A DNA stretch of 64,000 bases from Podarcis liolepis (taxonomy: Eukaryota). Numbering within the stretch: the first letter of the stretch is position 1; each line of letters opens with the position of its first letter. Location of the stretch: NCBI GenBank assembly GCA_965112155.1, contig OZ218114.1; one strand, written 5' to 3'. The translations under genes and the position numbers were made by a program. Of the stretch, positions 35,679-64,000 are shown one piece after another. The notes below the pieces were generated by a model that saw nothing but the letters and a program-made list of their open reading frames with translations, ran no database searches and was not told the DNA's origin.

Positions 35679-35879
35679 AGAAGGCAATTTTCTACATATA
35701 CATGCCCCTCTTCACCCTCTATTCAGGCAATCAAGTGTCAAGACCACATTCCAGCCAGGCAAAAACACTCCAAGGTAGTAGGACTGGTGAGGTGTGTGAC
35801 TAGGAAGGAGTGTGGCCTGGGGAGAGTTTTGAGGACTGTGTTTGGTCCTTAAGCCTGAGGATCACCACCCCCGTGTTAC

Positions 35880-35963
35880 CTGTATAGTATACCAGCTCAT
35901 CCCAACCAGGCTTGTGCCATGCGGCGTTCCTGATATCTTCTCTTGTCTGGAGATCTTTGTACG
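35880..35963 (-). CDS. NIPSNAP2: NIPSNAP2 exon 9
   Basis: [28 protein letters not shown]; 84 nt. Confidence 0.95.
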
Positions 35964-36447
35964 CTGGAAGTGTTGGGGGGGGAAAAATAATTTGGAAATA
36001 TCAGTGTCTTGATGTCCATCAGCACCTTTCTCTCAAATACAGCAACATACCAGAAACAAAGCACCAGAGGGCAAACCTCCTTAAAACCCTAAACAGTTAT
36101 TTACTGCCATGGCTCTATCCACCCTGCTCTAAGGAGCCTTGGAAACTGTACTGCTATGAGGAGGCAAGGGTCATATCAGTTTCACAAAATTACTTGTCCT
36201 GTTGGAATGGAGAGCAGATTAAAAGGGAGATAGGAAGCTATCTTAATCCGAGTTAGATCAGTGGTCCACCTATGCTTAATATTTCAACACTGGGATATAA
36301 TATTGTCCAGGGTTTTAGGTAGTGGGATTTCATGTTCCCTGCCTGGAGTTGCTAGGGACTGAACCTGAGACCTTTTGCATACAAAACAGGTGCTCTGCCA
36401 CAGAGCTACAGTCCTTCCCCAGATTTCTCAGGTCCAGGATGACCTAC

Positions 36448-36542
36448 CCCAAAGGTGATGAACCATGTAAAGCTGCCCAATCTGTGAGAAAAAGCCACCA
36501 ACAGCTTCTTTGTCATCCTGCCGGAAACCAATGGCACGAGCC
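36448..36542 (-). CDS. NIPSNAP2: NIPSNAP2 exon 8
   Basis: [31 protein letters not shown]; 95 nt. Confidence 0.95.
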
Positions 36543-38438
36543 CTGGAAGGTAGAATACATATGTATTACAAACAAGACATGAGTGTTGGAGCTGAGACAA
36601 TTACAAAGGTAACTATCAGATGTAACAGTACTAGAAAGAATGCAGCAAGGATCTACTAATTCCATCACTGCATAACATTATAATAACATAACCCCCTTGG
36701 TATTCAGAGCTAGAGAAATATTTCAGAGGGCTAGAAGCCTGCATGAATTCTTAATATTACAGCATCTGCTATAACTTCACACCAAGGGTAAAGGTAGCCC
36801 ACGTTGGCCCATAGGGAAAATGTGAAAAGGACATTCAAAGTTCAGGCCAATAATAATATCACAAAAAATATCACAAGCTTTTGAGTTTCCCTAAAACTCT
36901 TTATCAGGCTAGATGGTAAACAAAGTAACAGAAAGAAATTATGATGGTAATGCCATGTGTCTGCATTTGGTGATAATCTTAAAGACAAAATATGAGATGT
37001 AGGCAGGCATTTAAATGAGACCCTTTAGGTGCTGTGGAAGTATCAGGCACTACTTTCCACCTCTGTCAACATAAAAGACTGTTTAGTTTCTCTTTATTAC
37101 TGTTTTCCACCTATCAACGGTCCTGTGCATTTCACCTAAGGATAGAGACAGATGTGGACAATGGCCACTTCTTCTGTTTCCAGAGATGGGGAGTCAGACA
37201 TTGTTATGCTTTATGTTTCCAGCAGGCTTTGTTGCAACTTGCTCTCTCTCAGCAGATGCAGACTCAATTAGTTATCATCAGTCAAAATTTCTGGTGAATT
37301 CTCCATTAGATGGTAAATAAAACTTGACTAATGGCCACCACTGTCTGAAAAGAACTTATCAGAGATTATATTATCAGTCATGCTCATTGGGAGGCATATC
37401 CTCTGCCCACCCCACCATTTATTCTTGAAAAGGTGGAATACTGTTTTGTTTCTCCAGAGTGCAACTCTGAAATTTTATTTTCCCATGCATAGAGTGTTCT
37501 CTGCCTCCTGGGTGTTCACTGTCTGTATGTGTCAACAAACCCAGTTAATCAAACAACGGGCAAGATCGCTGAACAGGAGGACATGACCCTAAACTGGAGT
37601 TCCAGTGCATCAACTTGCCCATCTACTATGAAAAAGTCCTTTGAATGGGTATGGTATTTCAACAACAGCCCTCTCCAGGGTCGAGCTCCAGGAAAATGAG
37701 CTTTGCAGGTTTTCAGAAGAAGTCAGCTGCGCACCGTGCCAACTGGATGGCTGCTGTGACATCATGAACCCACCTCACTCCTCATCCCCAGTGATTTGAA
37801 AAACTTAAAAAAAACCACCCAGATTCTGCGTCTTTTTAAAAAAGGCACAGAATTATTGTTAAACTGTATGAAGGCACATGTGATGCTTTAAAAAATAATA
37901 ATAAAAAGGAAGAGGCAAGTCTGATGACTGAAAGTGCACTGGAATAACTGGCAAGTATGTTTTTATTGCTAGGAAGGCAGGCTCACCGCACAGGAGACAA
38001 AAAGGGGCAACTATTGTTTTGATGCACATTTGTACACATAGTGCTGGGTGGATATCATGCAACAAATGCAATATCCTGCAGATCAGATGGTGAGCCTCTG
38101 GACCATGAGCTGTGCCTAGTTAGTGTACCTTTTTATCTGGCCTGCAGCCTCACCTCCTCTGCCCCACTCCACCCTGTCTTCTGCTCTGCCACAATTTCCT
38201 CTTCTGCAGGCTAACACCTTGAATTCAAGCTGGGCCGCAAAGGAAATATCTTCCTTTGCAGATGTGGCTTGAATCCAAACTGCTACTGCAAAGGAAGAAA
38301 GAAAAGAATCCAGAGCACACTTTCATCTGTAATCAACGCACATGGCAAGTCCAAGTGATTGACAAATGGGCAGCTCTGTCCATCTCTCAAAATGGTATTT
38401 GGAATTGAGGGGAGCCCAGCATAGCAAGGGACACTTAC

Positions 38439-38470
38439 CAGTAGTTGCCCCATTCAATCATTGTTCCAGG
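38439..38470 (-). CDS. NIPSNAP2: NIPSNAP2 exon 7
   Basis: PGTMIEWGNYW; CAG acceptor, GTAAGT donor; 32 nt. Confidence 0.93.
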
Positions 38471-39097
38471 CTGGGGGGATAAAAGAAATACAGAGCAGGT
38501 GACTCTATGAGAATGACACCCTCCATTCCCTCCCCCGTTGCAACTGGGAAGTAGATGTGGGTTTTCTCTCCTGCCTCCAGAAAGGTTTCTGAATTCTAAT
38601 CAGTAACAAAAAAGACGACTCAGCCCAAAAGACATGGGGCAATTACATAATCACTTTAAGACCAGGATTCCCTCAAATACTTTTTTCAATGTCCCAATTT
38701 TCATTTCCATCACCTGTTGACACTGATAGGGAGCGTTTCTGTCAGAAATATGATATATACACTGAATATATATGATAAATGCACAATAAGCTTGCTTCTC
38801 AGTAAAAAACATATAGGATTGCACTGTTAGTAAATGCAACCTTTTCTGTTCAAAAGGCAGAACTTCCAAGAGAAAAAAGGAAAATCAATGAAAAAGAGTT
38901 GCAATGTGCTCTCTGTTATCCATTTCTGGCAGGAATCAACCTGCCAACTTGTCTACCAGAAGGATTCTCATAACAAATTTAAAGGCTAGCCTGACAAAGA
39001 GTGAATGCAGTCTCGCTCTTAAAGGTCTCATGAACCCAAGGATACACACAGAGGGAGGGAGGGAATGACTATTCTATGAATACATAAAGATGCTCAC

Positions 39098-39238
39098 ACG
39101 GAGTTGATAAGACCTCAGTTCATAGATATTGGGCCCTGTCCTCGGAACAGGCTCATTCCAAAAACTGAACTCCAACAGCAGCTGATTCTTGCGGGAGAGA
39201 AGCATGTTTCCCCTCTCTTTGCGAAACTCCACAAACCC
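39098..39238 (-). CDS. NIPSNAP2: NIPSNAP2 exon 6
   Basis: [47 protein letters not shown]; 141 nt. Confidence 0.95.
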
Positions 39239-39528
39239 CTAAAAATAAAATGAAAAATCCTTACAATGACAAGGCAAGATCACATGAATTATTTTTTAAA
39301 TTATCTAGTTTATGCTTCATCTGTCTGGATATTAAGAGCTTAATACTAGGAGGACATCAAACTTAAAGAGTGTATCCTGGTTTGATACAAAAACTCTGGG
39401 AGTCCTTGACAATGCAGTTATTGTTGTTTTTTTGATTTGTTTTTTTGCAATAAACTGTTAAGTTTGAGAGGCAAAGTGACTTTTAAGGATCAGGCTGATG
39501 AAGTCCAATCTTTTATGCTAGGACTTAC

Positions 39529-39599
39529 CTTATCATGTCGAAGCTTACTCATGACCTCTGTAAGAGCTGGGTAGCCTCCCTCATACCGCCACAGATGAA
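39529..39599 (-). CDS. NIPSNAP2: NIPSNAP2 exon 5
   Basis: VHLWRYEGGYPALTEVMSKLRHDK; 71 nt. Confidence 0.95.
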
Positions 39600-40758
39600 C
39601 TGAAATGAAAAGTGGCATATTTAAGAGTCTCCCTTCCCTACTGGAGATTCAAAACAGACTCCTCAAACGTCAGCTTCTTCCTGGCCAAATATTGTATCCC
39701 ATTGTCATTTCTAGAACCTAGCTCTTTCTTTCCAATTCTGGTGGGCACAGCACCCTTTTCCCAGCACCTTGAGAGTGGTTAGCCCTCTCACTTTCTCTCA
39801 GTGCCTAGGAACATGCCTTATACTGAGTCAGATTATTCATCCATCTAGCTCAGTACTGTTTACACTGACTGGTTGCGGCTCTCCAGGATTTATTCACTGG
39901 TCACTGTCCTTCCTTAAGCCTCTGCAGTATAATTTTCTTTCTTCACCAGCAGAAGTCAGAGGCCAAACAAAAAAGATAAATGGGACAATGCCCTGGGGAA
40001 GATATCCTACACAAGCCCCACTGAAATTAATGTGTGTGTTTGGGTCGAGGGAGGCAGCAAAGAGTGGCTGTAAACCACCTAGCGGCTTTCTGTTGAGTAA
40101 GTAGTATATAAAGTTTGTAAAAATAAAAAATAAAAGAGCCATAGCTCTACCACGAGCCCACTTCCAAAGATTTTACCAGTCAGAGGAAGGCTGCAAACTG
40201 TCACCCAGTCACTCAGGCCTTTCTGATACAGAATTTGAGCCAGCATCATCTGCCAAGAAGGTCGCGTGGACCATGAAATTGGCCAGTCCCCTGAAAGAAC
40301 TGCAAGAAGACCCGTCTGTGACGGGGAGTGTCTAGACTTGGGAGTGGCACATCCAAACTTGGGAGTGGCAACTCTGAATGTGTCTGAACCAGCCTGCCAG
40401 CTATGCAAGGGTGTATATTCACAGGAGCTGAATATACCATTTGATGGTTCTGCAGTGCCTGGGCCTGGGCCAGAGCAGCACCTTTACATTCCCTGCAACC
40501 TTGCCTGAAGGACATTCAGGCAAGGTTACATTGGGGACATAAGGATTCTGTTGAGGCTGAGTTTTGATGGAGAAAATGTCCATTTTCTCTGGGAATTTTC
40601 CTGGGCTCGTTAGAGGTTCTCTGCTGGTGTTGGTTGTCCACTGTCCCCAGACCTTGCCCCACATCCTGCAGGTTCCCATCCTGGCTGGAAGAGGGCCCCT
40701 ATCACAAGCACACATCATTAGCGCAGTTGTGCATTCTGTTGTACGTCTTATCTCCTAC

Positions 40759-40853
40759 CAGCCTGATCTTGCTCTCCGTACCACGTGTTCCACGTCCCCA
40801 CCAGTGTACATGGATATTCCTTCCCTTCGTGGATCTTTGGCAGCACCTCTTGA
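40759..40853 (-). CDS. NIPSNAP2: NIPSNAP2 exon 4
   Basis: [31 protein letters not shown]; AAG acceptor; 95 nt. Confidence 0.95.
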
Positions 40854-42008
40854 CTTTAAAAAAAGGAGAAGCAAAAAGGAACATAAGTACAGTAGCCATT
40901 CCATCAAGCTAAAGAAGAGAAGGCAGATGGGATTGCAGGGCCTCTTGATCGGCTCCAATGGAACACCAACAACTTTTCCATCTACTTGAAATCTATCCAT
41001 TCCAGTCTGAATTTGCTTTTTCCTCCTCCCAATTCCTTTTCTTTTTGTGTCATGTCTTTCAGATTTAAGCCTGAGGGCAAGGACAGTCTTATCACTGACA
41101 TTCATAAGCTGCTCTGGGAACAATTTTTAGCTGATAAAAATGTTTTTATCAAATAAATAACATTCCCATGTGTTTCCTATGTTATGAGTTACCCAAGTGT
41201 CATCTATTCCAACCCCTTGAAACACAGCAATAACAGCTAAAGAATTCCTGACAGATTGCCATCCACCCTGTTTAAAAACCTCCAATGAAGGAGAGTCCAC
41301 CACTTTCCAAGGTAGTCTGTTCCATTGTCAAACAGCCAGTGTTCGAAATCTGCCAGGCATGAAGTGCATTTTGCACCTGGCTATCAGCCATTTGCAACCA
41401 AGGACCATCTGGAAATGCATGCCTATGGATCTTTCAGTCTTGACTGTTTTCACACACTAGCAACACATCCTGTAGAATTCTATCCATTGTATTTTATCTG
41501 CACAATCAGAGCTGTCTGGACCAAAAATGGCAACTAGGCATTCTGCTTTGATACTGTAATCCTGATTTAATGAGCCATTTTGTGCCTAGCTTAAATATCT
41601 GAGTTTCTAACACTGCGAACAGCTCTTACTGCCAGGAAGTTCTTCCTAGTGTTTAGTCATTTTCTTGTCATTCGAATCCATCGGTACAGACCCTACCCTC
41701 TGCAGCAGCAGAAAACAACCTTGCTCCATCTTCCATGTGACAGCCCTTCAGATATTTGAGGATGACCATCATTTCACCTCTCAGCCTTCTAACCTCCAGA
41801 CTAAACATACACAATGCTTCTCATAATGCTTGGTTTCCAGACACTTTATCATATCAGTCACCCTCCTCTGCACCCGTTCCAGCTGGTCAATATCCTTCTT
41901 AAATTTATATTGCATAAATTTCTGGTACAGAAATTAACAACAAACCCAAGAGATGCACAAATGTTGGTTGGCTCACCAGCTAGCCCTTTTCTGTTGTAGA
42001 TGCTAACT

Positions 42009-42779: not shown

Positions 42780-42919
42780 ACTGTATTTTATAAAGACTGC
42801 TGGTCTCCCGTTTGGCTAAGAGGTTGGAGTGAGCATCTTTTCTGGGATCAACTTTGCGGACAAAAAGCGATTTTAACCAGCTGTCTTCTGCGGATCGGCT
42901 GTTTGACGACACAAGGCCC
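42780..42919 (-). CDS. NIPSNAP2: NIPSNAP2 exon 2
   Basis: [46 protein letters not shown]; 140 nt. Confidence 0.96.
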
Positions 42920-43503: not shown

Positions 43504-43715
43504 TAAAAGGTAAAGGTAAAGGACCCCTGGACGGTTAAGTCCAGTCAAAGGCAACTATGGGATTGCGGCGCTCATCTCACTTTCAGGCCAAGGGAGCCAG
43601 TGTTTGTCCACAGACATGTGGCCAGCATGACTAAACCGCTTCTGGTGCAATGGAACACCATGACGGAAACCAGAGCACATGGAAATGCCGTTTACCTTCC
43701 CGCCACAGCGGTACC
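43504..43715 (-). mobile_element. Sauria SINE (truncated)
   Basis: (ACCTTT)n tail; TSD TATTTGAGTAC. Confidence 0.85.
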
Positions 43716-44645
43716 TATTTGAGTACAAGGACTGCTTCTACCCATATATTGAGCACCATTGTCCAGTTCTTCTGCCACCACACCCCATGCATGTCAGAAT
43801 CATAAAATTGTAAAGTTGTCCAACCCCCCTGCAATGTAGGAACATATGCAGATCAAACCTGCAACCTTGGTATAAGCAGCACCATGCTCTAACCAACTGA
43901 ACTATCCAGGCTGATATATGTAAGTGAGCTCTAGTTCATGAAAGCTTATACCATAATAAAAGTTTGTCAGACATTAAGGTACTACAGATCTATTTTGTGT
44001 AACAGGCTAGCATAGTTACTGGTACTTCTCTGGAAAATGAAATTACGAGTTTTTCCACAGCTATGATATACCAGTATAAACTGGAAGTAAAAGTAATCTC
44101 AAAAGCTTCATTTTAATTAAGTCTGGGGCAGAAACCAGAGAGCAGCAACAGCTGTTGTTCAGGAGTTTTTGCTTGTCTACTGATTTACTGGGGAGAGGAG
44201 GATTAGTTAAAGCTTTCAAGCATGCTTATAATACCCAAATATTTGCAGTAACAAAATTGTACTGTGTGACACAACTGAAAATCAAAGATGAAACTGAAAT
44301 CAAACCCACAAACCTCCAAACTACACTACTTGTTATCTTGAGGAAGACAGTGTATCTAATTTCCCACCATTTGTGTCCTGGAGTGCATGTATCCTTATCT
44401 TCTATGAAAGTCAGGGAGGATTATGTGATGGTTACAGAGTTTGCTGAAAGTAAAAGTGTTAAGCAAAACCACATCCTTATTCACACACTAGCAGAACTCT
44501 TCCCAAGGGATGGGAAAATCCTAGGCAACTGAAAAAGTTGATTTTGGAGAATAATTGATTTTTCAACCCTAAACAACATTTGCTTCTAGAAACCTAAAGC
44601 ATTTTTCAATTTAGTTTAGTTTGCTGTCTTGACCATGTCATGATA

Positions 44646-45000
44646 CAGTGGTGCCCCGCAAGACGAATGCCTCGCAAGACGGAAAACCCGCTAGACGAAA
44701 GGGTTTTCCGTTTTTGAGCTGCTTCGCAAGACAATTTTCCCTATGGGCTTGCTTTGCAAGACGAAAACGTCTTGTGAGTGTTCCGATTTTTTTTCGCTCC
44801 CCCCCCTTTTTTCTAAGCCGCTAATCCGCTAATAGCCTTTTAGCCGCTAATCCGCTAAGCCTTTAATAGCCGCTAAGCCTTTAATAGCCGCTAAACCGCT
44901 AATAGGGCTAAGCCGCTAATAGGGTTGCTTCGCAAGACAAAAAACCGCTAGACGAAGAGACTCACGGAACGGATTAATTTTGTCTTGCGAGGCACCACTG
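44646..45000. mobile_element. Tigger-like MITE with CCGCTAA repeats
   Basis: TIR CAGTGGTGCC with TA TSD; reverse complement of 28166-28523. Confidence 0.88.
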
Positions 45001-46237
45001 TATAGCTTTACAGATCAGTTGAAACAGCAACAAAATCGGTAAGCAATCATTATAACAATTTACCACATGAGTATTTAAATCTATCTGACTCAATTGCAAG
45101 AACTCATGAAGTGGCAGATATCTCTCCACCTCCAATTAAAAACTATTTCTTTTGAATTAAGATAGGAAGGCAGCTGACACAGGAATATACAGTTCTTCCC
45201 TCCTGATAAATGGGACACTAGAATAAACAGCAGGGATCATTATCAGCACAATTATTTATTTAATAACATTTCTATATATACAACTTGACTGTTAAAAATA
45301 ACAACAACCTCAACATGGTTTACAAACATAGGGAATGTTCCTGTTAACATTTATCCAGAACACAGAAGGCATTTTCTAGAATCTTTAATTGCATTTGTTT
45401 ATTTTATCTATTATAGTGATTTTTACCACCACCCCTTGAAGCAAGTTCCCAGGCCACATAAGTAAATTTGGTTGGGGTCCTTAAAAAAATTTAAGAATCA
45501 ATCCATTCATATCTCACCCTTCCTCCTGAAAGAACCCAGGGTGGCTCATTATCATTATTATTTAGGACCCAAAGGAATTTCAATTGGCATTATTTCAGTC
45601 CCAAAAATAACTTCTTAAGACTAATAACCAACAATAACAATATATTTAGTCTCCAGGCAAAAACATTATTTTCTCATCAAACCTTTGGCTTTTAATTAAT
45701 TACCTGAGGCCTTTTTGCATGGGATGTTTTAATCCATTTAAAAAAAACAGAATTGTCTTTATTTTTATTTCCCCCCATATGCTTAAAATATTACAAGTCC
45801 GTTTGTGCTGCCATGGCAAAAAAGCAGCTAATAAATTTAATAAATAACAACGATCATACAAGATGGCTTACAACAACAGTAATAATACAATGTGATAAAT
45901 GAAAAGGGGTGGGGGGGTTGTCCATCTCCCATAATTTAGATGGGAGTGTGTAGAGGATTAGCCAAGAGATTAATGGGGTGACCCCCTACAATGGGGTGGG
46001 GACAAGGGATAATAATAGGTGGGGGCTCCGAGGTAGAACACTTTTACACCGTAAAAGATGTGGAGGCGAAATATCCATGAGGCGACCTCCAATGGCTGGG
46101 GGGCTTCTGCGTGAGGCGGGCTGAGCCAATGTACACACGCCCTCCTGTATAGAGATGGAGGGTGTGTGTACGTGTATATATATATATATATATTTTGGTG
46201 TCTTCGGGTGTCTTCCCGTGTAAGAGTTGGGGTGTCT

Positions 46238-46280
46238 AGGCGACGTTTCGACGAGGTCTCACTCGTCATCTTCAGGCTGG
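46238..46280 (-). ncRNA. Minimal type I hammerhead ribozyme motif (PLE left arm, sense to NIPSNAP2)
   Basis: CTGAAGA-T-GACGAG-tgagac-CTCGTC-GAAAC-GTC on the minus strand. Confidence 0.8.
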
Positions 46281-46512
46281 TGCTTTCGGCTTCTTGTTAC
46301 TGGAACAGAGCAGGATCTCAGTGTTTGAGTTCCTATAAATACTGTTGAGGGGGTGTGGTGTATAGCCTCCAACGTTCTGGGCAGAGGGGAAGTTCCCAGG
46401 TTAGTTTGCCTATTCTTCTTTTGTTCCTTAATTACTTGAGGGATATCTTGAGTGATTTCTTGAGTGATATTCTGAGTACCACTTAGGTGGGTCATTAAGT
46501 GTGGATTAGTTG

Positions 46513-47316
46513 CTAAAGCTTTCGTGTCTTGACCTCTTGAGCTTGTGAAGAGTTTTTCTGAGAAGATGGCTGTACTGCACTTAGTTGTGCTCTGGCTTGG
46601 CTTCGTGTATAGGGGCGAGCTGTGGTTTTGTGCCCTGTGCCAGCCAGATCTGTGTAGGGATTGCAGGGGGGTGCAGCATCCGGAGGTGCCACTATGGTTT
46701 GGCTACTGGATGGTGTCTGTAATTTATCTGTGGAGAGGGTCTGGGTTTGGGTCTGGTGTGGTTGATTGGTGATGGCGTTCTGTGTGCCTCTGGTTCTGGT
46801 GTCGGTTTTTGTGGGGAGGGCTAATTTCCAGATGTCTGGCAGGCGGGACGTGTCGTCACGCTTGTTCATGTTGTGAGGGTGTTTCTCTATCTCGATGGCT
46901 TCCATGATTATTCTCTTGTGGTGATGTTCCATGTTAAAGAGCAATTTGGAATCTGCAAAATTAATTTCGTGTCCTGTTTCTTTCATGTGTTGGAAAAGAG
47001 AGGAAGTTTTTTCTTCTTTTTTGACGGCATTCTTGTGTTCTGCGATACGTGCATTTATTCGTCTGTTTGTTTGTCCAATGTACGTGGCTGGGCAGACTTT
47101 GCAGGGTATTTCATAGACCCCTTGGTTTTCCAACTGGATTTTATCTTTGGGGTTTCTGAGGATATTGGCTATTTTTTGGTTGGTGCAAAAGGCTGTTTTG
47201 ATATTGTGTTTATGGAGGATTTTGCTAATTTTATCTGTAGTGCCCTTGATATAAGGAAGGAGGGCCATGCCATTGTTTTCTTCTGTGTCTTGGTTTTTGG
47301 GGGGTGGCAATGGCAT
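46513..47316 (-). CDS. PLE GIY-YIG endonuclease ORF, left arm (267 aa; expression unproven)
   Basis: Uninterrupted ORF with RT-thumb/linker remnant (LPYIKG) and a GIY-YIG domain with CxxC. Confidence 0.5.
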   Translation of the reverse strand: MPLPPPKNQDTEENNGMALLPYIKGTTDKISKILHKHNIKTAFCTNQKIANILRNPKDKIQLENQGVYEIPCKVCPATYIGQTNRRINARIAEHKNAVKKEEKTSSLFQHMKETGHEINFADSKLLFNMEHHHKRIIMEAIEIEKHPHNMNKRDDTSRLPDIWKLALPTKTDTRTRGTQNAITNQPHQTQTQTLSTDKLQTPSSSQTIVAPPDAAPPCNPYTDLAGTGHKTTARPYTRSQARAQLSAVQPSSQKNSSQAQEVKTRKL

Positions 47317-47999
47317 GGCCCTTTTGCACCAACCAAAAAATAGCCAATATCCTCAGAAACCCCAAAGATAAAATCCAGTTGGAAAACCAAGGGGTCTATG
47401 AAATACCCTGCAAAGTCTGCCCAGCCACGTACATTGGACAAACAAACAGACGAATAAATGCACGTATCGCAGAACACAAGAATGCCGTCAAAAAAGAAGA
47501 AAAAACTTCCTCTCTTTTCCAACACATGAAAGAAACAGGACACGAAATTAATTTTGCAGATTCCAAATTGCTCTTTAACATGGAACATCACCACAAGAGA
47601 ATAATCATGGAAGCCATCGAGATAGAGAAACACCCTCACAACATGAACAAGCGTGACGACACGTGCCGCCTGCCAGACATCTGGAAATTAGCCCTCCCCA
47701 CAAAAACCGACACCAGAACCAGAGGCACACAGAACGCCATCACCAATCAACCACACCAGACCCAAACCCAGACCCTCTCCACAGATAAATTACAGACACC
47801 ATCCAGTAGCCAAACCATAGTGGCACCTCCGGATGCTGCACCCCCCTGCAATCCCTACACAGATCTGGCTGGCACAGGGCACAAAACCACAGCTCGCCCC
47901 TATACACGAAGCCAAGCCAGAGCACAACTAAGTGCAGTACAGCCATCTTCTCAGAAAAACTCTTCACAAGCTCAAGAGGTCAAGACACGAAAGCTTTAG
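47310..47999 (+). CDS. PLE GIY-YIG endonuclease ORF, right arm (229 aa from ATG 47310; expression unproven)
   Basis: Same domain as the left arm with one visible aa change (DDTSRL vs DDTCRL). Confidence 0.5.
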   Translation: MAWPFCTNQKIANILRNPKDKIQLENQGVYEIPCKVCPATYIGQTNRRINARIAEHKNAVKKEEKTSSLFQHMKETGHEINFADSKLLFNMEHHHKRIIMEAIEIEKHPHNMNKRDDTCRLPDIWKLALPTKTDTRTRGTQNAITNQPHQTQTQTLSTDKLQTPSSSQTIVAPPDAAPPCNPYTDLAGTGHKTTARPYTRSQARAQLSAVQPSSQKNSSQAQEVKTRKL

Positions 48000-48231
48000 C
48001 AACTAATCCACACTTAATGACCCACCTAAGTGGTACTCAGAATATCACTCAAGAAATCACTCAAGATATCCCTCAAGTAATTAAGGAACAAAAGAAGAAT
48101 AGGCAAACTAACCTGGGAACTTCCCCTCTGCCCAGAACGTTGGAGGCTATACACCACACCCCCTCAACAGTATTTATAGGAAATCAAACACTGAGATCCT
48201 GCTCTGTTCCAGTAACAAGAAGCCGAAAGCA

Positions 48232-48274
48232 CCAGCCTGAAGATGACGAGTGAGACCTCGTCGAAACGTCGCCT
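48232..48274 (+). ncRNA. Minimal type I hammerhead ribozyme motif (PLE right arm)
   Basis: CTGAAGA 48237-48243; stem II GACGAG/CTCGTC; GAAAC 48263-48267; GTC cleavage triplet 48268-48270. Confidence 0.8.
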
Positions 48275-48675
48275 AGACACCCCAACTCTTACACGGGAAG
48301 ACACCCGAAGACACCAAAACCTACATTCCTGTACCCGTGAAAATCTACGAAAGCAAATATATATATGTGTGTGTGTGTGTGTGTGTATATACACACAGTA
48401 TATATGTGTGTGTGTCAAAGACGCTATTTATTGAATAATATGAGCGGGGAAGAGAAGAGACGATGAGACCCCCCCCCCATTCCCACAATTTATTAACTCT
48501 GAAGTGCTGTTGGGGGAGGAAGCAAGAAACCACCTGACCAGCCCATGACCTTGAGCGAGGGGGGGGGAGGAAAGAGCGCGCGCCAGAAAGAAACGGCTCT
48601 CCTCTCCCCCCCCCCCCCGTCGCTCGACCTTCCCGCCACTTTCCACCCCTCCCTCCCCGGCAGCTTCCCCCTCAC

Positions 48676-48779
48676 CTGAGGAAAAAAAGGCGGGAACGGC
48701 CCCCTTGGGCTGGGAAGGCGCTGAGGCGGAGGCGGCCGCCGCTCCCCCGCCGCAGCAGCAGTAGCGCCCCGGCCGCCAT
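48676..48779 (-). CDS. NIPSNAP2: NIPSNAP2 (GBAS) exon 1, mitochondrial presequence-like
   Basis: MAAGALLLLRRGSGGRLRLSAFPAQGGRSRLFFLR (Arg-rich, no acidic residues); Kozak AAGATGG; donor AG|GTGAG; phase fits exon 2. Confidence 0.9.
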
Positions 48780-49000
48780 CTTGACCACCTCAACCTGAGG
48801 GGACGGCGCGGGGGAAAAGGAAGGGGAAATGGGGGCGCAGTGCCCCCCAGTAGCCACTAGAGGGAGCCTTTTCCCCCACCGGGAGGGACGGAGTTGAGGA
48901 GGGGGACACGGAAAGCTTTCTCTCTCCCCCCCCCCCAACGCCGCACATTTCTCCGACGAAGGTCTCAAAGGCGCAGCGCCATTAAGCTGAGGCGACTCTG
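48780..49000 (-). promoter_or_regulatory. NIPSNAP2 CpG-island promoter and 5' UTR
   Basis: GC/CpG-rich; YY1-type AAGATGGCGG overlapping the start codon. Confidence 0.65.
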
Positions 49001-50646
49001 GCCAAGGTGCAACCCCAGAACCTTGTTGGGGGGTTGAACAGTGTGACGGATTGAAAAATAAACGGTTTAGTTCCCCTCGAGGGGGGCTGCCCTACGTGGA
49101 TCCTAAAGTGCCATCTTGCTCCTCTTAGAACAATTTAAATGAATAGGCTCTAATAGACCTGAGGAAAAGCCCCTTCTGAACATGGGCAGAGTGCATTTTT
49201 TGTTCACAAAGGGCACCACAGACTAGGCCTACAGAGGGCTCCTGTGGTTGTGTAGAGTGCGCTCACCCCCACCAAAAGAAAGCATTTTTAAATGTAATTA
49301 TTTTTCAAATCCAATGCAAAACATGTAAACCAAGGAAGTGGCACTTGTATACCATTTGCACAAAAACCTCAGCCTGAGGAAAGGCTAAAGAAGACATTCT
49401 GGTCCAGAACAAAAGTTTGCATAATTCATAAATTTGGAAAGACATTGGATACCCTTCTGATGTCATATTTGTTTGTAGATGTAATAATAGATGCCCAGCC
49501 AGCTGTAAATGCATGTTTTGTGTTTTTCTCCAGCCATGCACAATGTTTGCATACTTTTTTTCAATTAAGGCAATTATCATACTGATGCCAAACTTCGTGT
49601 GGACCCCTGATCAGCATAGCCACAGCAGTCCACACTATTAAACTAGTACAGTAAGTCAAAATGTCCCCTATTTGGCCCTTCCAAAATTTGCAGGTAGCTG
49701 CTGCAACAAAGAAGTATCATATTAAAGTCTTGCTTTGTAAATCTGTACTCTCCACTGTAATAAATTTAGTAAAAAGTATTTTTAAAACATCTAATTTTTG
49801 ATAGATTTCCTCCCCACCTCCCAGAAGAACCCATTTGTTTATTAATACATGGAACAGGAAAAAAACAATGAACGTTTCCCCACCGGCTTTGCATCCAAGT
49901 TGTTAATGAAACTCTGGCCAGAAAAATTATAGCCAGCTGGCAACTAATTCTGAAATTGGGACAATATTGGTTTGGGAAATCAAGTTTTCTTTTTGGGTGA
50001 CTCCCTGATAATCCACATTTCTAAAAAATAAAAAAACAACCAGTAAAAGCAATATTACTCCCATGAAATTAATTTTATTAGGAGAATATTGTATTATATT
50101 CAACAGGCTTACTTAGATGTAAATTCCACAGAGATCAATAGAATTGCCTGTCTTTACCAGGGAGCGAATTCCATTGAGCTCAGTAATACATTAAAGTAAG
50201 CATGTTTAGGATCAGGTAGTTGTTTTTGTAATACTTTCAGCCCAAGTGCTGTATAATTATAGTATAATTATTAGGATTATCCTATATAGTTTTATGATTA
50301 TGTAGTGTGCTGGGTTGGGAACATTTAATAAAAGAGCAGAGCATAATATATCATTTTTACCAGCAGAAAGTGCCCAACGTTGCTTGGGAATTATAAGAAA
50401 CCAAAAATATCAGTACAGTTTTGAAACCAGTACATAAGAAATAGCCTGCTGAATGAGGCCCTTGGCACATTTAGTCCAGCATTCTGTTATCACAGTGGCC
50501 GAGATGCCTATGGGAAACAAGCAAGCAGAACATGAGCACGAGAGCCCTCTCCCTCCCTTGAAGGGGCAAAGTCCTCTGGGATGTTTGCCTGTACAAGCAC
50601 CACTAACAGGAACCTGAGCTGTGCAAGAACATGGAAGAGTGTTTGC

Positions 50647-54141: not shown

Positions 54142-54480
54142 AAAGGTAAAGGGATCCCTGACCGTTAGGTCCAGTTGTGGCCGACTCTGGGGTTCCGGCG
54201 CTCATCTCGCTTTATTGGCTGAGGGAGCCAGCATACAGCTTCCGGGTCATGTGGCCAGCATGACTAAGCTGCTTCTGCCGAACCAGAGCAGCGTACGGAA
54301 ATGCCGTTTACCTTCCCGCCAGAGCGGTACCTACTTATCTACTTGCACTTTGATGTGCTTTCAAACAGCTAGGTTGGCAGTAGCAGGGACCGAGCAATGG
54401 GAGCTCAGCCCGTCACAGGGATTCAAACAGCTGACCTTCTGATCGGCAAGTCCTAGGCTCTGTGGTTTAACCCACAGCAC
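54142..54480 (-). mobile_element. Sauria SINE (near full length)
   Basis: tRNA-like head, core CCGTTTACCTTCCCGCC, ACCTTT tail. Confidence 0.9.
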
Positions 54481-61775: not shown

Positions 61776-62112
61776 CTGTGAAGGACTAGCTGAACCTTAT
61801 GGCTAGTAGCCGTCAATAGCCCTCCATGTCACCTTCCTCCAGTCTCAGCATTTCCCCTGTAGAACTCAGCAGGGAGGAGGAGGATGGGGACAAAACTAAG
61901 TTTAGTTGGCTTTGTCTGTTGTTGGTTTTGGCTCTACCTCCTGTTCGACTCCCTGCCTTAGGTCCCACCAACTCTCACTGGGTACCAGACATCACTGTTC
62001 ACTGCTTGCAGAGTTGGAAGGGACCAGGAATCTTGGCCCAACGTGGGGCAAAATGATTAAGAGCCTCATGCTGTACCAACTGAGCTGAGGAGTTTATCCT
62101 TATCCTGAGATA

Positions 62113-62274
62113 AAGGTAAAGGGACCCCTGACCATTAGGTCCAGTTGTGGCCAACTCTGGGGTTGCGGCACTCATCTCGCTTTATTGGCCAAGGGAGCGG
62201 GGATTCGAACTCCCGACTTTCTGATCGGCAAGTCCTAGGTTCTGTGGTTTAACCCACAGCACCACCCGCGTCCC
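62113..62274 (-). mobile_element. Internally deleted Sauria SINE
   Basis: Head and tail intact, core missing; TSD TATCCTGAGATA. Confidence 0.85.
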
Positions 62275-62583
62275 TATCCTGAGATAGCTGTTCCTAAATT
62301 GCCCTCGGGAGGTCCAGTCCCCAGTGCCCTAGGGATGCTTGAAGGAGATAGATTGTTTACAGCTCTGCAATAATGTGTCATCTCCCCACCCCCAAATAAT
62401 AGAAAACCTCCAGGGCAGCAATATTTTGGCTAAAGCGCTTTCCCCCGCCAAGAGCACCATTCCCTCCTGTGGCTTCCAGCAACAGGAACATTACTTGCCT
62501 CCAGTAATGTGGAAGAAGAGCATAGCCAACATGGCCCAGATGAACACAGCAAAACGTTTTGATGCATTGTAATTCATGTTCAT

Positions 62584-62876
62584 GTGGTTAAACCACAGAG
62601 CCTAGGGCTTGCTGATCAGAAGGTCAGCAGTTCGAATCTCCGCCATGGGGTGAGCTCCTGCTGCTTGGTCCCTGCTCCTGCCAACCTAGCAGTTCAAAAG
62701 CATGTCAAAGTGCAAGTAGATAAATAGGTACCGCTCCGGCGGGAAGGTAAACGGCGTTTCTGCTGGCCACATGACCCGGAAGCTGTACGCCGGCTCCCTC
62801 GGCCAATAAAGCGAGATGAGCGCTGCAACCCCAGAGTCGGCCACGACTGGACCTAATGTTCAGGGGTCCCTTTACC
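62584..62876 (+). mobile_element. Sauria SINE
   Basis: TSD TAATTCATGTTCAT; TTTACCT tail. Confidence 0.88.
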
Positions 62877-64000
62877 TAATTCATGTTCATAGTTTGGTCG
62901 ATGTTATTTATGTTCTGATTTTCAAACTTGTTTTTAACCTTGGCTTTTGCCGGCAATTGTAACAATGCATTTTCACAAGGACTCCCCCCCCCAACAAACA
63001 AACAAACAAACAACCCTCAAAGTGATTTGGAAATGCAGAGAATTGATCTTAAGACTGGGACAATGAAAATGGGGGAAACTGACAGGTTTGCCCAACTTTA
63101 GTGGCAACAAGCGACTGGTGATGGGGATAACAGCCATGTCTCCCTCAGGCCTTGAACTCCTTTGGCAAAGGCTTTGACAAAAATATGTTTTCCCGAGACT
63201 GCTCATAGAAAGGCAAAGCAAATGGCTCTTGGGGGCAGGGCGTGGTGCAAGAAGAGTTAGCGAAACTAGATGGCTTTCTGCTTCATTGAGCTATTCAGCT
63301 GTCCTAGCAGACTAGGGTTATCTTCTTCTTCATTTGAATAGAAAGGCAAACCTTAAATCAATCAGTTGCCGCCACCGACCACACCTGGGGCTGGTCAGCT
63401 TGAGGGCACTGGGACAGATCCCTCCCATGAAGCTATTTTAAAATCTGGCTCCTGGCAGCCCTTCCAAATTTTAAATTGGGACGCGATTCACCTTTTGCCT
63501 ACACTTGAAAGGGAAGAAGCGTTGCTCCTATGGCAAATTCTCTGTGAAGTGCCTCTGCTGTTCATCTCTCATTACCTTGTCCCACAGGCCAAGATATTTT
63601 GATGCTGAGAGGCAGAACATTTAAATGTCACCCCCTGTGCGGGCAAGAATAGGATAGGCAATTATTTCTTGCCTTATCTGCTGCCCTTTAGTGCTGCTCT
63701 GAAATTTGCTGCCTGAGGTACACGGATTTGCCGTGCCAATTTCATTCTCCTCACCTTTCATCCACTGTCGCCTTCCAGAGAGGACGCGATTGAAGTTTAT
63801 AAAAGTATGCAGTGTGGAGAAAGGAGAGAGAAGTACCCCCCCCAAAAAAACCCACCCTATTTATTTATTGCATTTCTACCCTCCCTCATCCTCAAGGGAT
63901 AAGGTGCTCAAGGTGGTGTATGTGGTATTTTCCCTATCTCATTTCATCCTCACCACAACCCTCTGCATTAGGTTATACTGAGAGGCAGTGACTGTTTGTA

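What the first reader, a model, noticed from the sequence alone, without database searches (positions are those of the whole stretch)
46193..48356. 1-kb near-perfect Penelope palindrome in NIPSNAP2 intron 1, a potential long-dsRNA source
Seen: positions x and 94512-x are complementary at both ends of the arms (46193-47192 and 47320-48319), so each arm is 1000 bp with no net indel. I spotted two substitutions by eye (GGAACTC vs GGAAATC; Ser vs Cys codon), and the loop is 127 nt. The insert lies about 320 bp downstream of exon 1 of a housekeeping gene, inside a (TA)n tract. Established: PLEs often carry an inverted 5' segment lacking the short 3' tail, and here a 37-nt tail (48320-48356) is on the right arm only. 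Inference: the insertion is very recent and possibly polymorphic. NIPSNAP2 pre-mRNA would form about 1 kb of dsRNA, a substrate for ADAR, Dicer or MDA5, which could yield endo-siRNAs against the active family. The DNA could also extrude a cruciform.
Basis: partly seen in the sequence, partly recalled or inferred. Interest (0 to 1): 0.8.

Follow-up and report, generated by a model that had tools for sequence, protein, structure and literature searches.

The report
Young head-to-head Penelope retroelement palindrome
A real 1-kb mirror-image repeat in the first intron of a NIPSNAP gene is a very recent, not yet fixed, dead-on-arrival insertion of a Penelope-like jumping gene, laid down head-to-head in the way already described for this class; its proposed role as a double-stranded RNA source is untested.

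Summary
Arms 46193-47192 and 47320-48319 are 1000 bp each, with no indel, two mismatches and a 127-nt spacer. A 37-nt tail sits on the right arm only.

Both arms are the 3' end of a Penelope/Poseidon-type retroelement: GIY-YIG endonuclease ORF, pLTR, hammerhead core, and the next ORF's ATG inside that core. The two outer ends lie 77 and 114 nt after that ATG. The second matches the reverse-transcription start published for the Anolis element PAc, whose protein cuts and extends both DNA strands.

Each arm holds element sequence the other lacks, so neither is simply a copy of the other. The best reading is two target-primed reverse transcriptions, one per strand, joined in the middle.

Contigs from the best-matching species (1 difference in 2.1 kb of flank) and from two relatives bridge an empty site. 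The insertion is therefore young and not fixed. The filled junctions could not be checked in reads.

The host gene is a NIPSNAP family member on the minus strand. The insert starts 319 nt into intron 1.

A roughly 1-kb RNA hairpin is predicted, but no RNA data exist for a carrier, so editing, siRNA and MDA5 effects are untested.

This scan has already reported several such palindromes elsewhere in this genome. This one is ordinary for the class.

The parts
46160..46192 (.). Left target flank: (TG)n/(TA)n microsatellite that ends at the insertion
   Evidence: Sequence. Read laying masked 46160-46204 as a repeat.
46193..47306 (-). Left PLE copy, 1114 nt, minus strand, without tail. It is 5'-truncated at 47306.
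   Evidence: It mirrors the right copy. Family contigs of organisms A and F run on differently behind 47306, with 3 and 18 loose ends (table 7).
46193..47192 (-). Left arm of the palindrome (1000 bp)
46513..47316 (-). Open 267-codon ORF of the left copy: linker plus GIY-YIG endonuclease plus C-terminal tail. Its first codons are read from junction letters.
   Evidence: the ORF listing. Pfam GIY-YIG E=3.7e-4, just under the gathering score. 9682 relatives at E<=1e-3, and the full-length ones tested carry RVT_1. Alignment A1.
46245..46275 (-). Hammerhead-type core (CUGAAGA...GAAAC) of the left copy
   Evidence: Exact pattern match. No Rfam model scores it.
47193..47319 (.). 127-nt spacer. It consists of 114 nt of left-copy sequence (47193-47306), one extra G (47307), and the first 12 nt of a 15-nt right-copy piece.
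   Evidence: loose ends at 47306.
47308..47322 (+). 15-nt piece, the 5' end of the right copy. It equals left-copy sense 47275->47261. Next to it, 71 nt present in the left copy are missing, with CCT microhomology.
   Evidence: The native LLPYIKGTTDKISKIL... stretch is conserved in relatives and absent from the right copy.
47320..48319 (+). Right arm of the palindrome (1000 bp)
47304..47999 (+). Open 231-codon ORF of the right copy (GIY-YIG endonuclease part)
48237..48267 (+). Hammerhead-type core of the right copy. The next-ORF ATG at 48243 lies inside it.
   Evidence: The layout is as published for PAc (PMC11167929).
48320..48356 (+). 37-nt tail, on the right copy only. The tail-less end is ATG+77 and the tailed end is ATG+114.
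   Evidence: PAc starts reverse transcription 111-118 nt into the ORF, and its tail is the stretch between two start sites. A tail-less family end followed by (TA)n is seen in organism B at 48320 (table 7).
48357..48417 (.). Right target flank: (AT)5(GT)n... microsatellite
   Evidence: Masked by read laying.
48676..48779 (-). Coding part of exon 1 of the host NIPSNAP gene. ATG is at 48779-48777 and the 5' splice site CAG|GTGAGG lies at 48676|48675.
   Evidence: Sequence and ORF. Stranded RNA reads of organism F cover 48603-48763 with the first mate on + only.
42781..42900 (-). Exon 2 region of the host gene (…[36 protein letters not shown]), so intron 1 spans about 42.9-48.675 kb
   Evidence: Further exons lie at 40751-40855, 39493-39648, 39077-39238, 38438-38599, 36431-36565 (Pfam NIPSNAP E=2.3e-6) and 35803-36000.

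Best explanation
This is one recent insertion of a very abundant Penelope/Poseidon-clade retroelement into a (TA)n/(TG)n microsatellite, 319 nt into intron 1 of a minus-strand NIPSNAP gene. It consists of two 5'-truncated, non-autonomous copies of the element's last ~1.05-1.1 kb, joined head-to-head. Inferred mechanism: the element's protein cut both DNA strands, and each 3' end primed reverse transcription on element RNA. One event started at the tailed site (ATG+114, right copy). The other started at the tail-less site (ATG+77, left copy). Both cDNAs stopped about 1.1 kb in, 31 nt apart in element coordinates, and were joined end to end with one extra G. The right copy also lost 71 nt at a CCT microhomology, either by a template jump or by a later central deletion. 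The insertion is not fixed. It has no shown function. When the host gene is transcribed, the intron should fold into a ~1-kb near-perfect RNA hairpin, a likely nuclear ADAR substrate that is removed with the intron.
For: Shown here. The palindrome geometry is as stated. Both arms carry an open GIY-YIG ORF. The arm ORF's full-length relatives of about 800-840 aa have RVT_1 in the middle and the homologous endonuclease region at the C-terminus. A hammerhead-type core holds the next ORF's ATG, and the two ends fall at ATG+77 and ATG+114. The right arm has the 37-nt tail that the left lacks. The left copy has 71 nt and a further 31 nt at its 5' end that the right copy lacks. So neither arm can be a plain copy of the other. 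Family contigs leave the window sequence exactly at 47306, which marks the left copy's truncation point. A tail-less end at 48319 followed by (TA)n recurs elsewhere in organism B. Empty-site contigs exist in three organisms. In organism A the contig has 0 differences over 830 nt and 1 over 1283 nt of flank, with 52 nt between the flanks. In organisms B and F the spans between the flanks are 43 and 45 nt, and the flanks are about 1-2% diverged (table 8). Summed contig depth on the arms is 10^4-10^5, against about 30 in the flanks, and rises towards the 3' end. From papers. PAc cleaves and extends both strands, starts reverse transcription at two internal sites whose distance is the tail, and prefers AT-rich DNA (PMC11167929). 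The inverted 5'-truncated copy, the one-sided 30-40-bp tail and the (TA)n bias are class traits (PMC8557442; PMC3846280).
Against: No read or contig shown proves the filled junctions. Read laying masked 46160-46204 and 48349-48417, and no piece across 47306/47307 was listed. Two-strand priming is shown in vitro for an Anolis element, not for this family or this locus. No TSD beyond (AT)5 can be read. The filled allele carries 42-51 more microsatellite letters than the empty-site contigs, and this is unexplained. No Rfam hammerhead model scores the motif. Pfam GIY-YIG is just under the gathering score.
Confidence: 0.8

Rival explanations
1. Snap-back origin. One cDNA was made by target-primed reverse transcription, its 3' end folded back and primed on itself, and the second arm is a copy of the first. 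Endonuclease trimming later removed one tail, and a central deletion created the asymmetry.
For: Arkhipova et al. 2013 interpret palindromes at inverted PLE junctions as self-priming (PMC3846280). The two truncation points here are only 31 nt apart in element coordinates. Other head-to-head joints of the family in organisms A and F are also nearly mirror-symmetric (table 5). The spacer holds a 13-15-bp stem.
Against: Each arm has native element sequence the other lacks: the tail on the right, and 71 + 31 nt on the left. There is no complementarity at the would-be priming point 47306/47307. The tail-less outer end coincides with a recurrent family terminus rather than with a random trim. This model needs two extra events.
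Confidence: 0.15
2. Assembly artefact. The palindrome is a fold-back or chimeric-read product, or a misplaced repeat, and the true locus is the empty site seen in the contigs.
For: The best-matching public run gives a contig across an empty site with near-identical flanks. No read evidence for the filled junctions could be obtained. PLE tandem/inverted structures are known to trouble assemblies (PMC8557442).
Against: The insert has every mark of a true PLE integration. Both outer ends lie at canonical termini. The tail is on one side only. It sits in a (TA)n target. The centre is asymmetric, with a 71-nt microhomology deletion and one filler base, and the arms differ at two positions. Fold-back read artefacts duplicate local sequence symmetrically, flanks included; here the flanks are unrelated unique DNA. 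Several like insertions are noted elsewhere in this genome.
Confidence: 0.04
3. Consequential dsRNA locus. The intronic hairpin is heavily A-to-I edited and/or diced, and it matters biologically: trans-silencing of the active PLE family by endo-siRNAs, MDA5 triggering, or altered NIPSNAP splicing or expression.
For: The predicted pre-mRNA fold is -2100 kcal/mol, with 994 of 1000 axis pairs and a longest perfect helix of 517 bp. Exon 1 of the gene is expressed in a related species. siRNAs mapping exactly to inverted Penelope regions were reported in transformed D. melanogaster (PMC3681739). RNA of organism F on the PLE arms shows more A>G/T>C places (41/20) than G>A/C>T (15/14), unlike DNA contigs of that species. 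This is a hint only.
Against: No RNA data exist from a carrier. The RNA run laid has no intron reads at all here. The family already yields sense and antisense RNA at about 3:1 in organism F, and head-to-head copies are frequent in this genome, so this one locus adds little. From general knowledge: intronic hairpins stay nuclear and are degraded after splicing, vertebrate somatic Dicer handles long dsRNA poorly, and MDA5 is cytoplasmic. In Drosophila the Penelope siRNAs did not silence the element efficiently.
Confidence: 0.07
4. Old insertion whose arms are kept identical by arm-to-arm gene conversion, as in sex-chromosome palindromes.
For: Arm identity alone (99.8%) cannot date a palindrome.
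Against: The site is empty in the near-identical organism A and in two relatives whose flanks are 1-2% diverged.
Confidence: 0.02

Closest known systems
PAc, the Poseidon element of Anolis carolinensis (Frangieh et al. 2024, PMC11167929)
   Same: The ORF start codon sits at the start of hammerhead stem II, and the 3' insertion end lies about 111-118 nt into the next ORF (here 114). [quoted passage not shown] In vitro, both DNA strands are cut and extended, which explains head-to-head products.
   Different: This is a different host and family. No sequence comparison with PAc itself was possible because no PAc sequence was at hand. Here only the last ~1.1 kb is present, twice, with no RT domain.
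Canonical PLE insertion architecture (Evgen'ev & Arkhipova 2005; Arkhipova 2006; Craig et al. 2021, PMC8557442; Arkhipova et al. 2013, PMC3846280)
   Same: An inverted 5'-truncated copy abuts the direct copy. A 30-40-bp tail sits at one end only. The target is a microsatellite and the TSD is hard to read.
   Different: The usual picture is a long or full copy plus a short inverted pLTR. Here both copies are truncated at almost the same point, which gives a nearly pure palindrome.
Other head-to-head PLE palindromes noted by this scan in the same genome (s1-846408 with 2.2-kb arms; s1-847803 at 372 bp; s1-843442, s1-847963 and s1-846418 at 90-200 bp)
   Same: Same element class, (TA)n targets, near-perfect arms, young age; some were also found to be polymorphic.
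   Different: Arm length is intermediate (1 kb). The centre is asymmetric with a 127-nt spacer. It lies next to the CpG-rich promoter and exon 1 of an expressed gene. Those notes were not re-tested here.
L1 twin-priming inversions (Ostertag & Kazazian 2001; from my own knowledge)
   Same: The second DNA strand's 3' end also primes reverse transcription, giving an inverted 5' part.
   Different: Twin priming copies two different parts of one RNA, an inversion without duplication. Here both arms are the same 3' segment, each started at a proper 3' initiation site.
Inverted-repeat TE pairs in introns as ADAR substrates or hairpin-RNA siRNA loci (inverted Alus; Drosophila hpRNA; Penelope inverted copies in transformed D. 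melanogaster, PMC3681739)
   Same: An intronic inverted repeat of one TE family is predicted to form long dsRNA in the host transcript.
   Different: No editing or small-RNA data exist for this locus. Arm identity and length are far above typical Alu pairs.

Membership tests
Penelope-like elements (EN+ canonical, Penelope/Poseidon type) | C-terminal GIY-YIG endonuclease with two Cys between GIY and YIG and downstream His residues (CCHH) | tested here: met
   The ORF reads GVYEIPCKVCPATYIGQTNRRINARIAEH...QH...H. Pfam GIY-YIG E=2.7e-4 to 3.7e-4, 21.2-21.6 bits against a cut-off of 22.6. G66 V67 Y68 C72 C75 Y79 G81 R85 E93 H94 H110 H116 are invariant in alignment A1. The Atlas neighbours are animal GIY-YIG clusters.
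Penelope-like elements (EN+ canonical, Penelope/Poseidon type) | PLE-type reverse transcriptase upstream of the endonuclease in one ORF | tested here: inconclusive
   This copy is truncated and has no RT. Four full-length relatives of the arm ORF (P0021, P0103, P0077, P0104; 807-841 aa) carry RVT_1 at about 336-535 and the homologous endonuclease region at the C-terminus. The family's own full-length copy was not seen.
Penelope-like elements (EN+ canonical, Penelope/Poseidon type) | Hammerhead ribozyme motif in the pLTR | tested here: inconclusive
   The CUGAAGA-stem II-GAAAC-GUC core is present in both arms and laid out as described for PAc. No Rfam hammerhead model matches, even at E<=10 on 161 nt. 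Cleavage was not tested.
Penelope-like elements (EN+ canonical, Penelope/Poseidon type) | Insertion signature: inverted 5'-truncated copy, optional 30-40-bp tail at one end, 5' truncation | tested here: met
   against the descriptions in PMC8557442 and PMC3846280.
Penelope-like elements (EN+ canonical, Penelope/Poseidon type) | Clade placement (Penelope/Poseidon vs Neptune, Nematis or Hydra) by RT phylogeny | not tested
   No RT is present in this copy and no reference set was at hand. The Poseidon-like call rests on the shared ATG-in-hammerhead layout and the position of the RT start site.
NIPSNAP2 (GBAS) orthologue as host gene | NIPSNAP domain exons in order on one strand, with the insert inside intron 1 | tested here: met
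   Minus-strand exon peptides were found. Pfam NIPSNAP E=2.3e-6 for 36431-36565. Atlas neighbours are NIPSNAP clusters, at a low score of 0.81. Exon 1 has a splice donor at 48676|48675, and stranded RNA reads cover it.
NIPSNAP2 (GBAS) orthologue as host gene | Paralogue 2 rather than NIPSNAP1 or NIPSNAP3 | not tested
   This rests on my recall of the human NIPSNAP2 sequence, which the exon peptides match almost residue for residue. No reference protein was fetched.

The most novel reading that the evidence does not exclude
Two readings remain open. (a) Mechanistic: the two arms were copied independently, because each holds element letters the other lacks, yet they stopped within 31 nt of each other, as do other head-to-head joints of the family. 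That would be natural-genome evidence that a dimeric Penelope RNP reverse-transcribes from both cut strands in step. (b) Functional: because the hairpin is still polymorphic and sits in the first intron of an expressed gene, carriers and non-carriers form a natural test of whether a 1-kb perfect intronic dsRNA in a reptile is edited, diced into siRNAs against an active retroelement family, or sensed.
Probability: 0.12. Interest if true: 0.55.

Novelty: new member of a known kind. Interest (0 to 1): 0.22.

Why it matters
Mostly it does not change anything. It is one more dead-on-arrival product of a very active lizard-type Penelope family, with the insertion architecture described since 2005 and rationalised in vitro in 2024.

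Its modest value is threefold. First, the anatomy is unusually clean. Both outer ends lie at the two known initiation sites, and the centre has one filler base and a microhomology deletion. This argues for two independent priming events rather than snap-back. Second, it is an unfixed structural variant next to a promoter, so it is usable as a marker. It is also a natural carrier versus non-carrier comparison for long intronic dsRNA. Third, a 1-kb palindrome with a short spacer is a potential fragile site close to exon 1.

Tried and rejected
Rfam found no hammerhead or other real family, neither on 6.5 kb nor on 161 nt. The weak miRNA-like hits are microsatellite and G/C-run hairpins far below gathering.

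Those ORFs are not in the protein collection by exact look-up.

Read laying masked both flank/insert junctions as repeats and listed no piece across 47306/47307. The filled allele is therefore unconfirmed by reads.

A TSD was sought. Only (AT)5 is shared, which is trivial in a microsatellite.

I considered that the empty-site contigs could be a de Bruijn short-cut through a long TSD. I rejected this because the two flanks share no repeat of 31 nt or more, so the bridging words cannot come from the filled allele.

Dating from two arm differences was considered. Both are transversions. They could be reverse-transcriptase errors or source differences, so they give only an upper bound.

Gene conversion in an old palindrome is rejected by the empty sites.

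The RNA run is from organism F, whose DNA contig shows the empty site, so nothing can be said about editing of this locus.
Full report
**Observation.** The repeat finder reports arms of about 1 kb with a 127-nt gap. A base-by-base test on the axis x+y=94512 gives uninterrupted complementarity from 46193 to 47192, against 48319 down to 47320. There are two exceptions, at 46329/48183 and 46847/47665. In element sense these read GGAACTC vs GGAAATC and a Ser vs Cys codon. Outside the arms, complementarity falls to chance at once. The 37 nt at 48320-48356 have no mirror image on the left. No other repeat of this kind exists in the window.

**What the arms are.**
- Each arm carries an open reading frame: 267 codons on the minus strand in the left arm and 231 on the plus strand in the right arm.
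- The ORF has a GIY-YIG core, GVYEIPCKVCPATYIGQT...AEH. Pfam scores it E about 3e-4, a bit under the gathering score.
- A full HMMER pass over 1.8 billion representatives finds 9682 relatives at E<=1e-3.
- The four full-length relatives tested (807-841 aa) have an RVT_1 domain in the middle. Their C-terminal region is homologous to this ORF. That is the RT plus C-terminal GIY-YIG layout of canonical Penelope-like elements.
- Downstream of the stop (47997-47999) come about 240 nt of untranslated sequence. Then follows a hammerhead-type core, CUGAAGA-stem-GAAAC-GUC, at 48237-48267 and mirrored at 46245-46275. An ATG at 48243 lies inside that core.
- Rfam does not score the motif, even on 161 nt at E<=10. 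I therefore call it a hammerhead-type core by pattern only.

**Match to the published Anolis element.** Frangieh et al. 2024 (PMC11167929) describe PAc, a Poseidon element of Anolis.
- Its protein cuts and extends both strands of an AT-rich target.
- Reverse transcription starts at two internal sites of the RNA, the main one 111-118 nt into the ORF.
- The "tail" seen in part of the genomic copies is the stretch between the two sites.

Here the tailed end (48356) is 114 nt from the ATG and the tail-less end (46193, mirror of 48319) is 77 nt from it. One contig of organism B ends a family copy at 48319 and goes straight into (TA)n (table 7). The tail-less terminus is therefore a recurrent end of this family.

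Craig et al. 2021 (PMC8557442) and Arkhipova et al. 2013 (PMC3846280) describe three traits as typical of the class: the adjacent inverted 5'-truncated copy, the 30-40-bp tail at one end only, and the microsatellite target bias.

**The centre.**
- The left copy runs beyond its arm to 47306. At that point, contigs of other family copies in organisms A and F diverge from the window (3 and 18 loose ends).
- Its extra stretch encodes LLPYIKGTTDKISKILHKHNIKT, which is conserved in relatives.
- After one extra G (47307), the right copy begins with a 15-nt piece at 47308-47322. This piece equals the left copy's 47275->47261.
- The right copy then skips 71 nt that the left copy has, at a CCT microhomology.
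- The spacer is therefore 114 nt of left copy, 1 filler base, and 12 nt of right copy.
- In element coordinates the two copies stop 31 nt apart.

The right copy owns the tail. The left copy owns 71 + 31 nt that the right lacks. So neither arm can be a simple fold-back copy of the other. I take this as support for two priming events, one per strand, followed by end joining or a template jump. This is an inference from PAc biochemistry and is not shown for this family.

Self-priming snap-back, proposed by Arkhipova et al. 2013, remains possible if one adds tail trimming and a later central deletion. Other near mirror-symmetric joints of the family in the contigs (table 5) keep that rival alive.

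**Age and polymorphism.** I laid Logan contigs of three DNA runs on 44900-49700.

| Run | Organism | Contig | Left flank matched | Right flank matched | Letters between flanks |
|---|---|---|---|---|---|
| X1 (best holder) | A | 2305 nt | 45330-46159, 0 differences | 48418-49700, 1 difference | 52 |
| X3 | B | 3088 nt | flanks about 1% diverged | same | 43 |
| X7 | F | 427 nt | flanks about 2% diverged | same | 45 |

- These are empty sites.
- The two window flanks share no repeat of 31 nt or more. The bridging words therefore cannot arise from the filled allele.
- The insertion is thus younger than the split from B and F. It is absent from at least one haplotype of the near-identical organism A.
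- The two arm differences are both transversions. They may be reverse-transcriptase errors or source differences, so they set only an upper bound on age.
- The tool masked 46160-46204 and 48349-48417, and no piece over 47306/47307 was listed. The filled junctions were therefore not confirmed by reads.
- The filled allele has 94 nt of microsatellite outside the insert, against 43-52 nt in the empty alleles. This is unexplained.

**Is it an artefact?** I rate this as unlikely, about 4%. The insert has proper element termini, a one-sided tail, a preferred target, an asymmetric centre and unrelated unique flanks. None of these is expected from a fold-back read or a collapse.

**Host gene.**
- NIPSNAP-family exon peptides lie in order on the minus strand between about 35.8 and 42.9 kb. 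Support comes from Pfam NIPSNAP, E=2.3e-6, and from weak Atlas neighbours.
- Exon 1 has its ATG at 48779-48777 and a CAG|GTGAGG donor at 48676|48675.
- In a stranded RNA run of organism F, exon 1 is covered with first mates on the plus strand only. This also calibrates strand reading.
- The insert's right edge is 319 nt into intron 1, beside a GC-rich (62-68%) promoter region.
- That it is paralogue 2 rests on my memory of the human protein.

**dsRNA claim.**
- Folding the minus-strand transcript of 46143-48406 gives -2100 kcal/mol. It has 994 of 1000 axis pairs and a longest perfect helix of 517 bp.
- That the pre-mRNA can form the hairpin is therefore sound. What follows from it is untested.
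- No RNA run exists for organism A. The RNA run laid is from organism F, whose DNA contig shows the empty site, and it has no intron reads here.
- That run shows family RNA in sense and antisense at about 3:1. It also shows more A>G/T>C than G>A/C>T places on the arms. This is a hint of editing of family dsRNA at best.
- siRNAs from inverted Penelope copies were already reported in transformed D. melanogaster, and they did not silence the element well (PMC3681739).
- From general knowledge, intronic hairpins are nuclear ADAR substrates and rarely reach Dicer or MDA5 in vertebrate somatic cells.

**Context in this scan.** Earlier notes on other parts of this genome describe several head-to-head Penelope palindromes in (TA)n, with arms from 90 bp to 2.2 kb. 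Some are polymorphic, and follow-up agents judged them ordinary for the class. I did not re-test them. My own read data show the family at very high abundance in three species.

**Verdict.** The identification, location and youth are supported. The functional reading is unproven and not new in concept. This is a new copy of a known kind of insertion product, so interest is low to modest.

Noticed in passing
window 46241-46661 joined to 47831-48254 (table 5): Contigs of organisms A and F join a left-arm position x to a right-arm position y with x+y within about 25 of the palindrome axis sum. Examples are 46249>48254, 46310>48209 and 46657>47831. These look like other head-to-head copies of the family elsewhere, truncated at nearly mirror-image points. 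The matched sides are only 20-29 nt, so the evidence is weak.
   Followed up: no
window 46193-48356, RNA run X23 of organism F: On the PLE arms the RNA reads differ from the window at 41 A>G and 20 T>C places, against 15 G>A and 14 C>T. DNA contigs of the same species give 14/10 against 11/10. This could be A-to-I editing of family dsRNA, or differences of the expressed subfamily.
   Followed up: no
window 44900-45003: An extremely abundant repeat. Summed contig depth is about 10^6 in three species, and RNA depth is about 250 on both strands in organism F, with many loose ends at 44907, 44939, 44967 and 45002-45004.
   Followed up: no
window 46160-46192 and 48357-48417: The filled allele has 94 nt of (TG)n/(TA)n outside the insert, while the empty-site contigs of three organisms have only 43-52 nt there. 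This could be a long imperfect TSD, microsatellite growth at insertion, or ordinary length variation.
   Followed up: partly
window 48552-48626: A G-run/C-run hairpin in intron 1, about 50-120 nt from the exon 1 donor. It gives weak miRNA-like Rfam hits (mir-641, mir-483 and others) far below gathering, and is most likely chance from low-complexity sequence.
   Followed up: no
window 47059-47054 (minus strand): AATAAA in the sense of the host transcript, inside the left copy's ORF. It is a conceivable cryptic poly(A) signal in intron 1, but it would be buried in the hairpin.
   Followed up: no
window 45201-45359: Run X1 holds two alleles here. One is identical to the window (depth 21.5). The other has 5 substitutions and 5 gap letters (depth 15.4). 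The sampled individual is therefore heterozygous close to the insertion site. At 48853 X1 shows only A where the window has G.
   Followed up: no
window 43512-43733, 54142-54480, 62112-62877: Several copies, direct and inverted, of a repeat of about 300 nt with a tRNA-like segment (GGGATTCGAAC...). It is probably a tRNA-derived SINE family.
   Followed up: no
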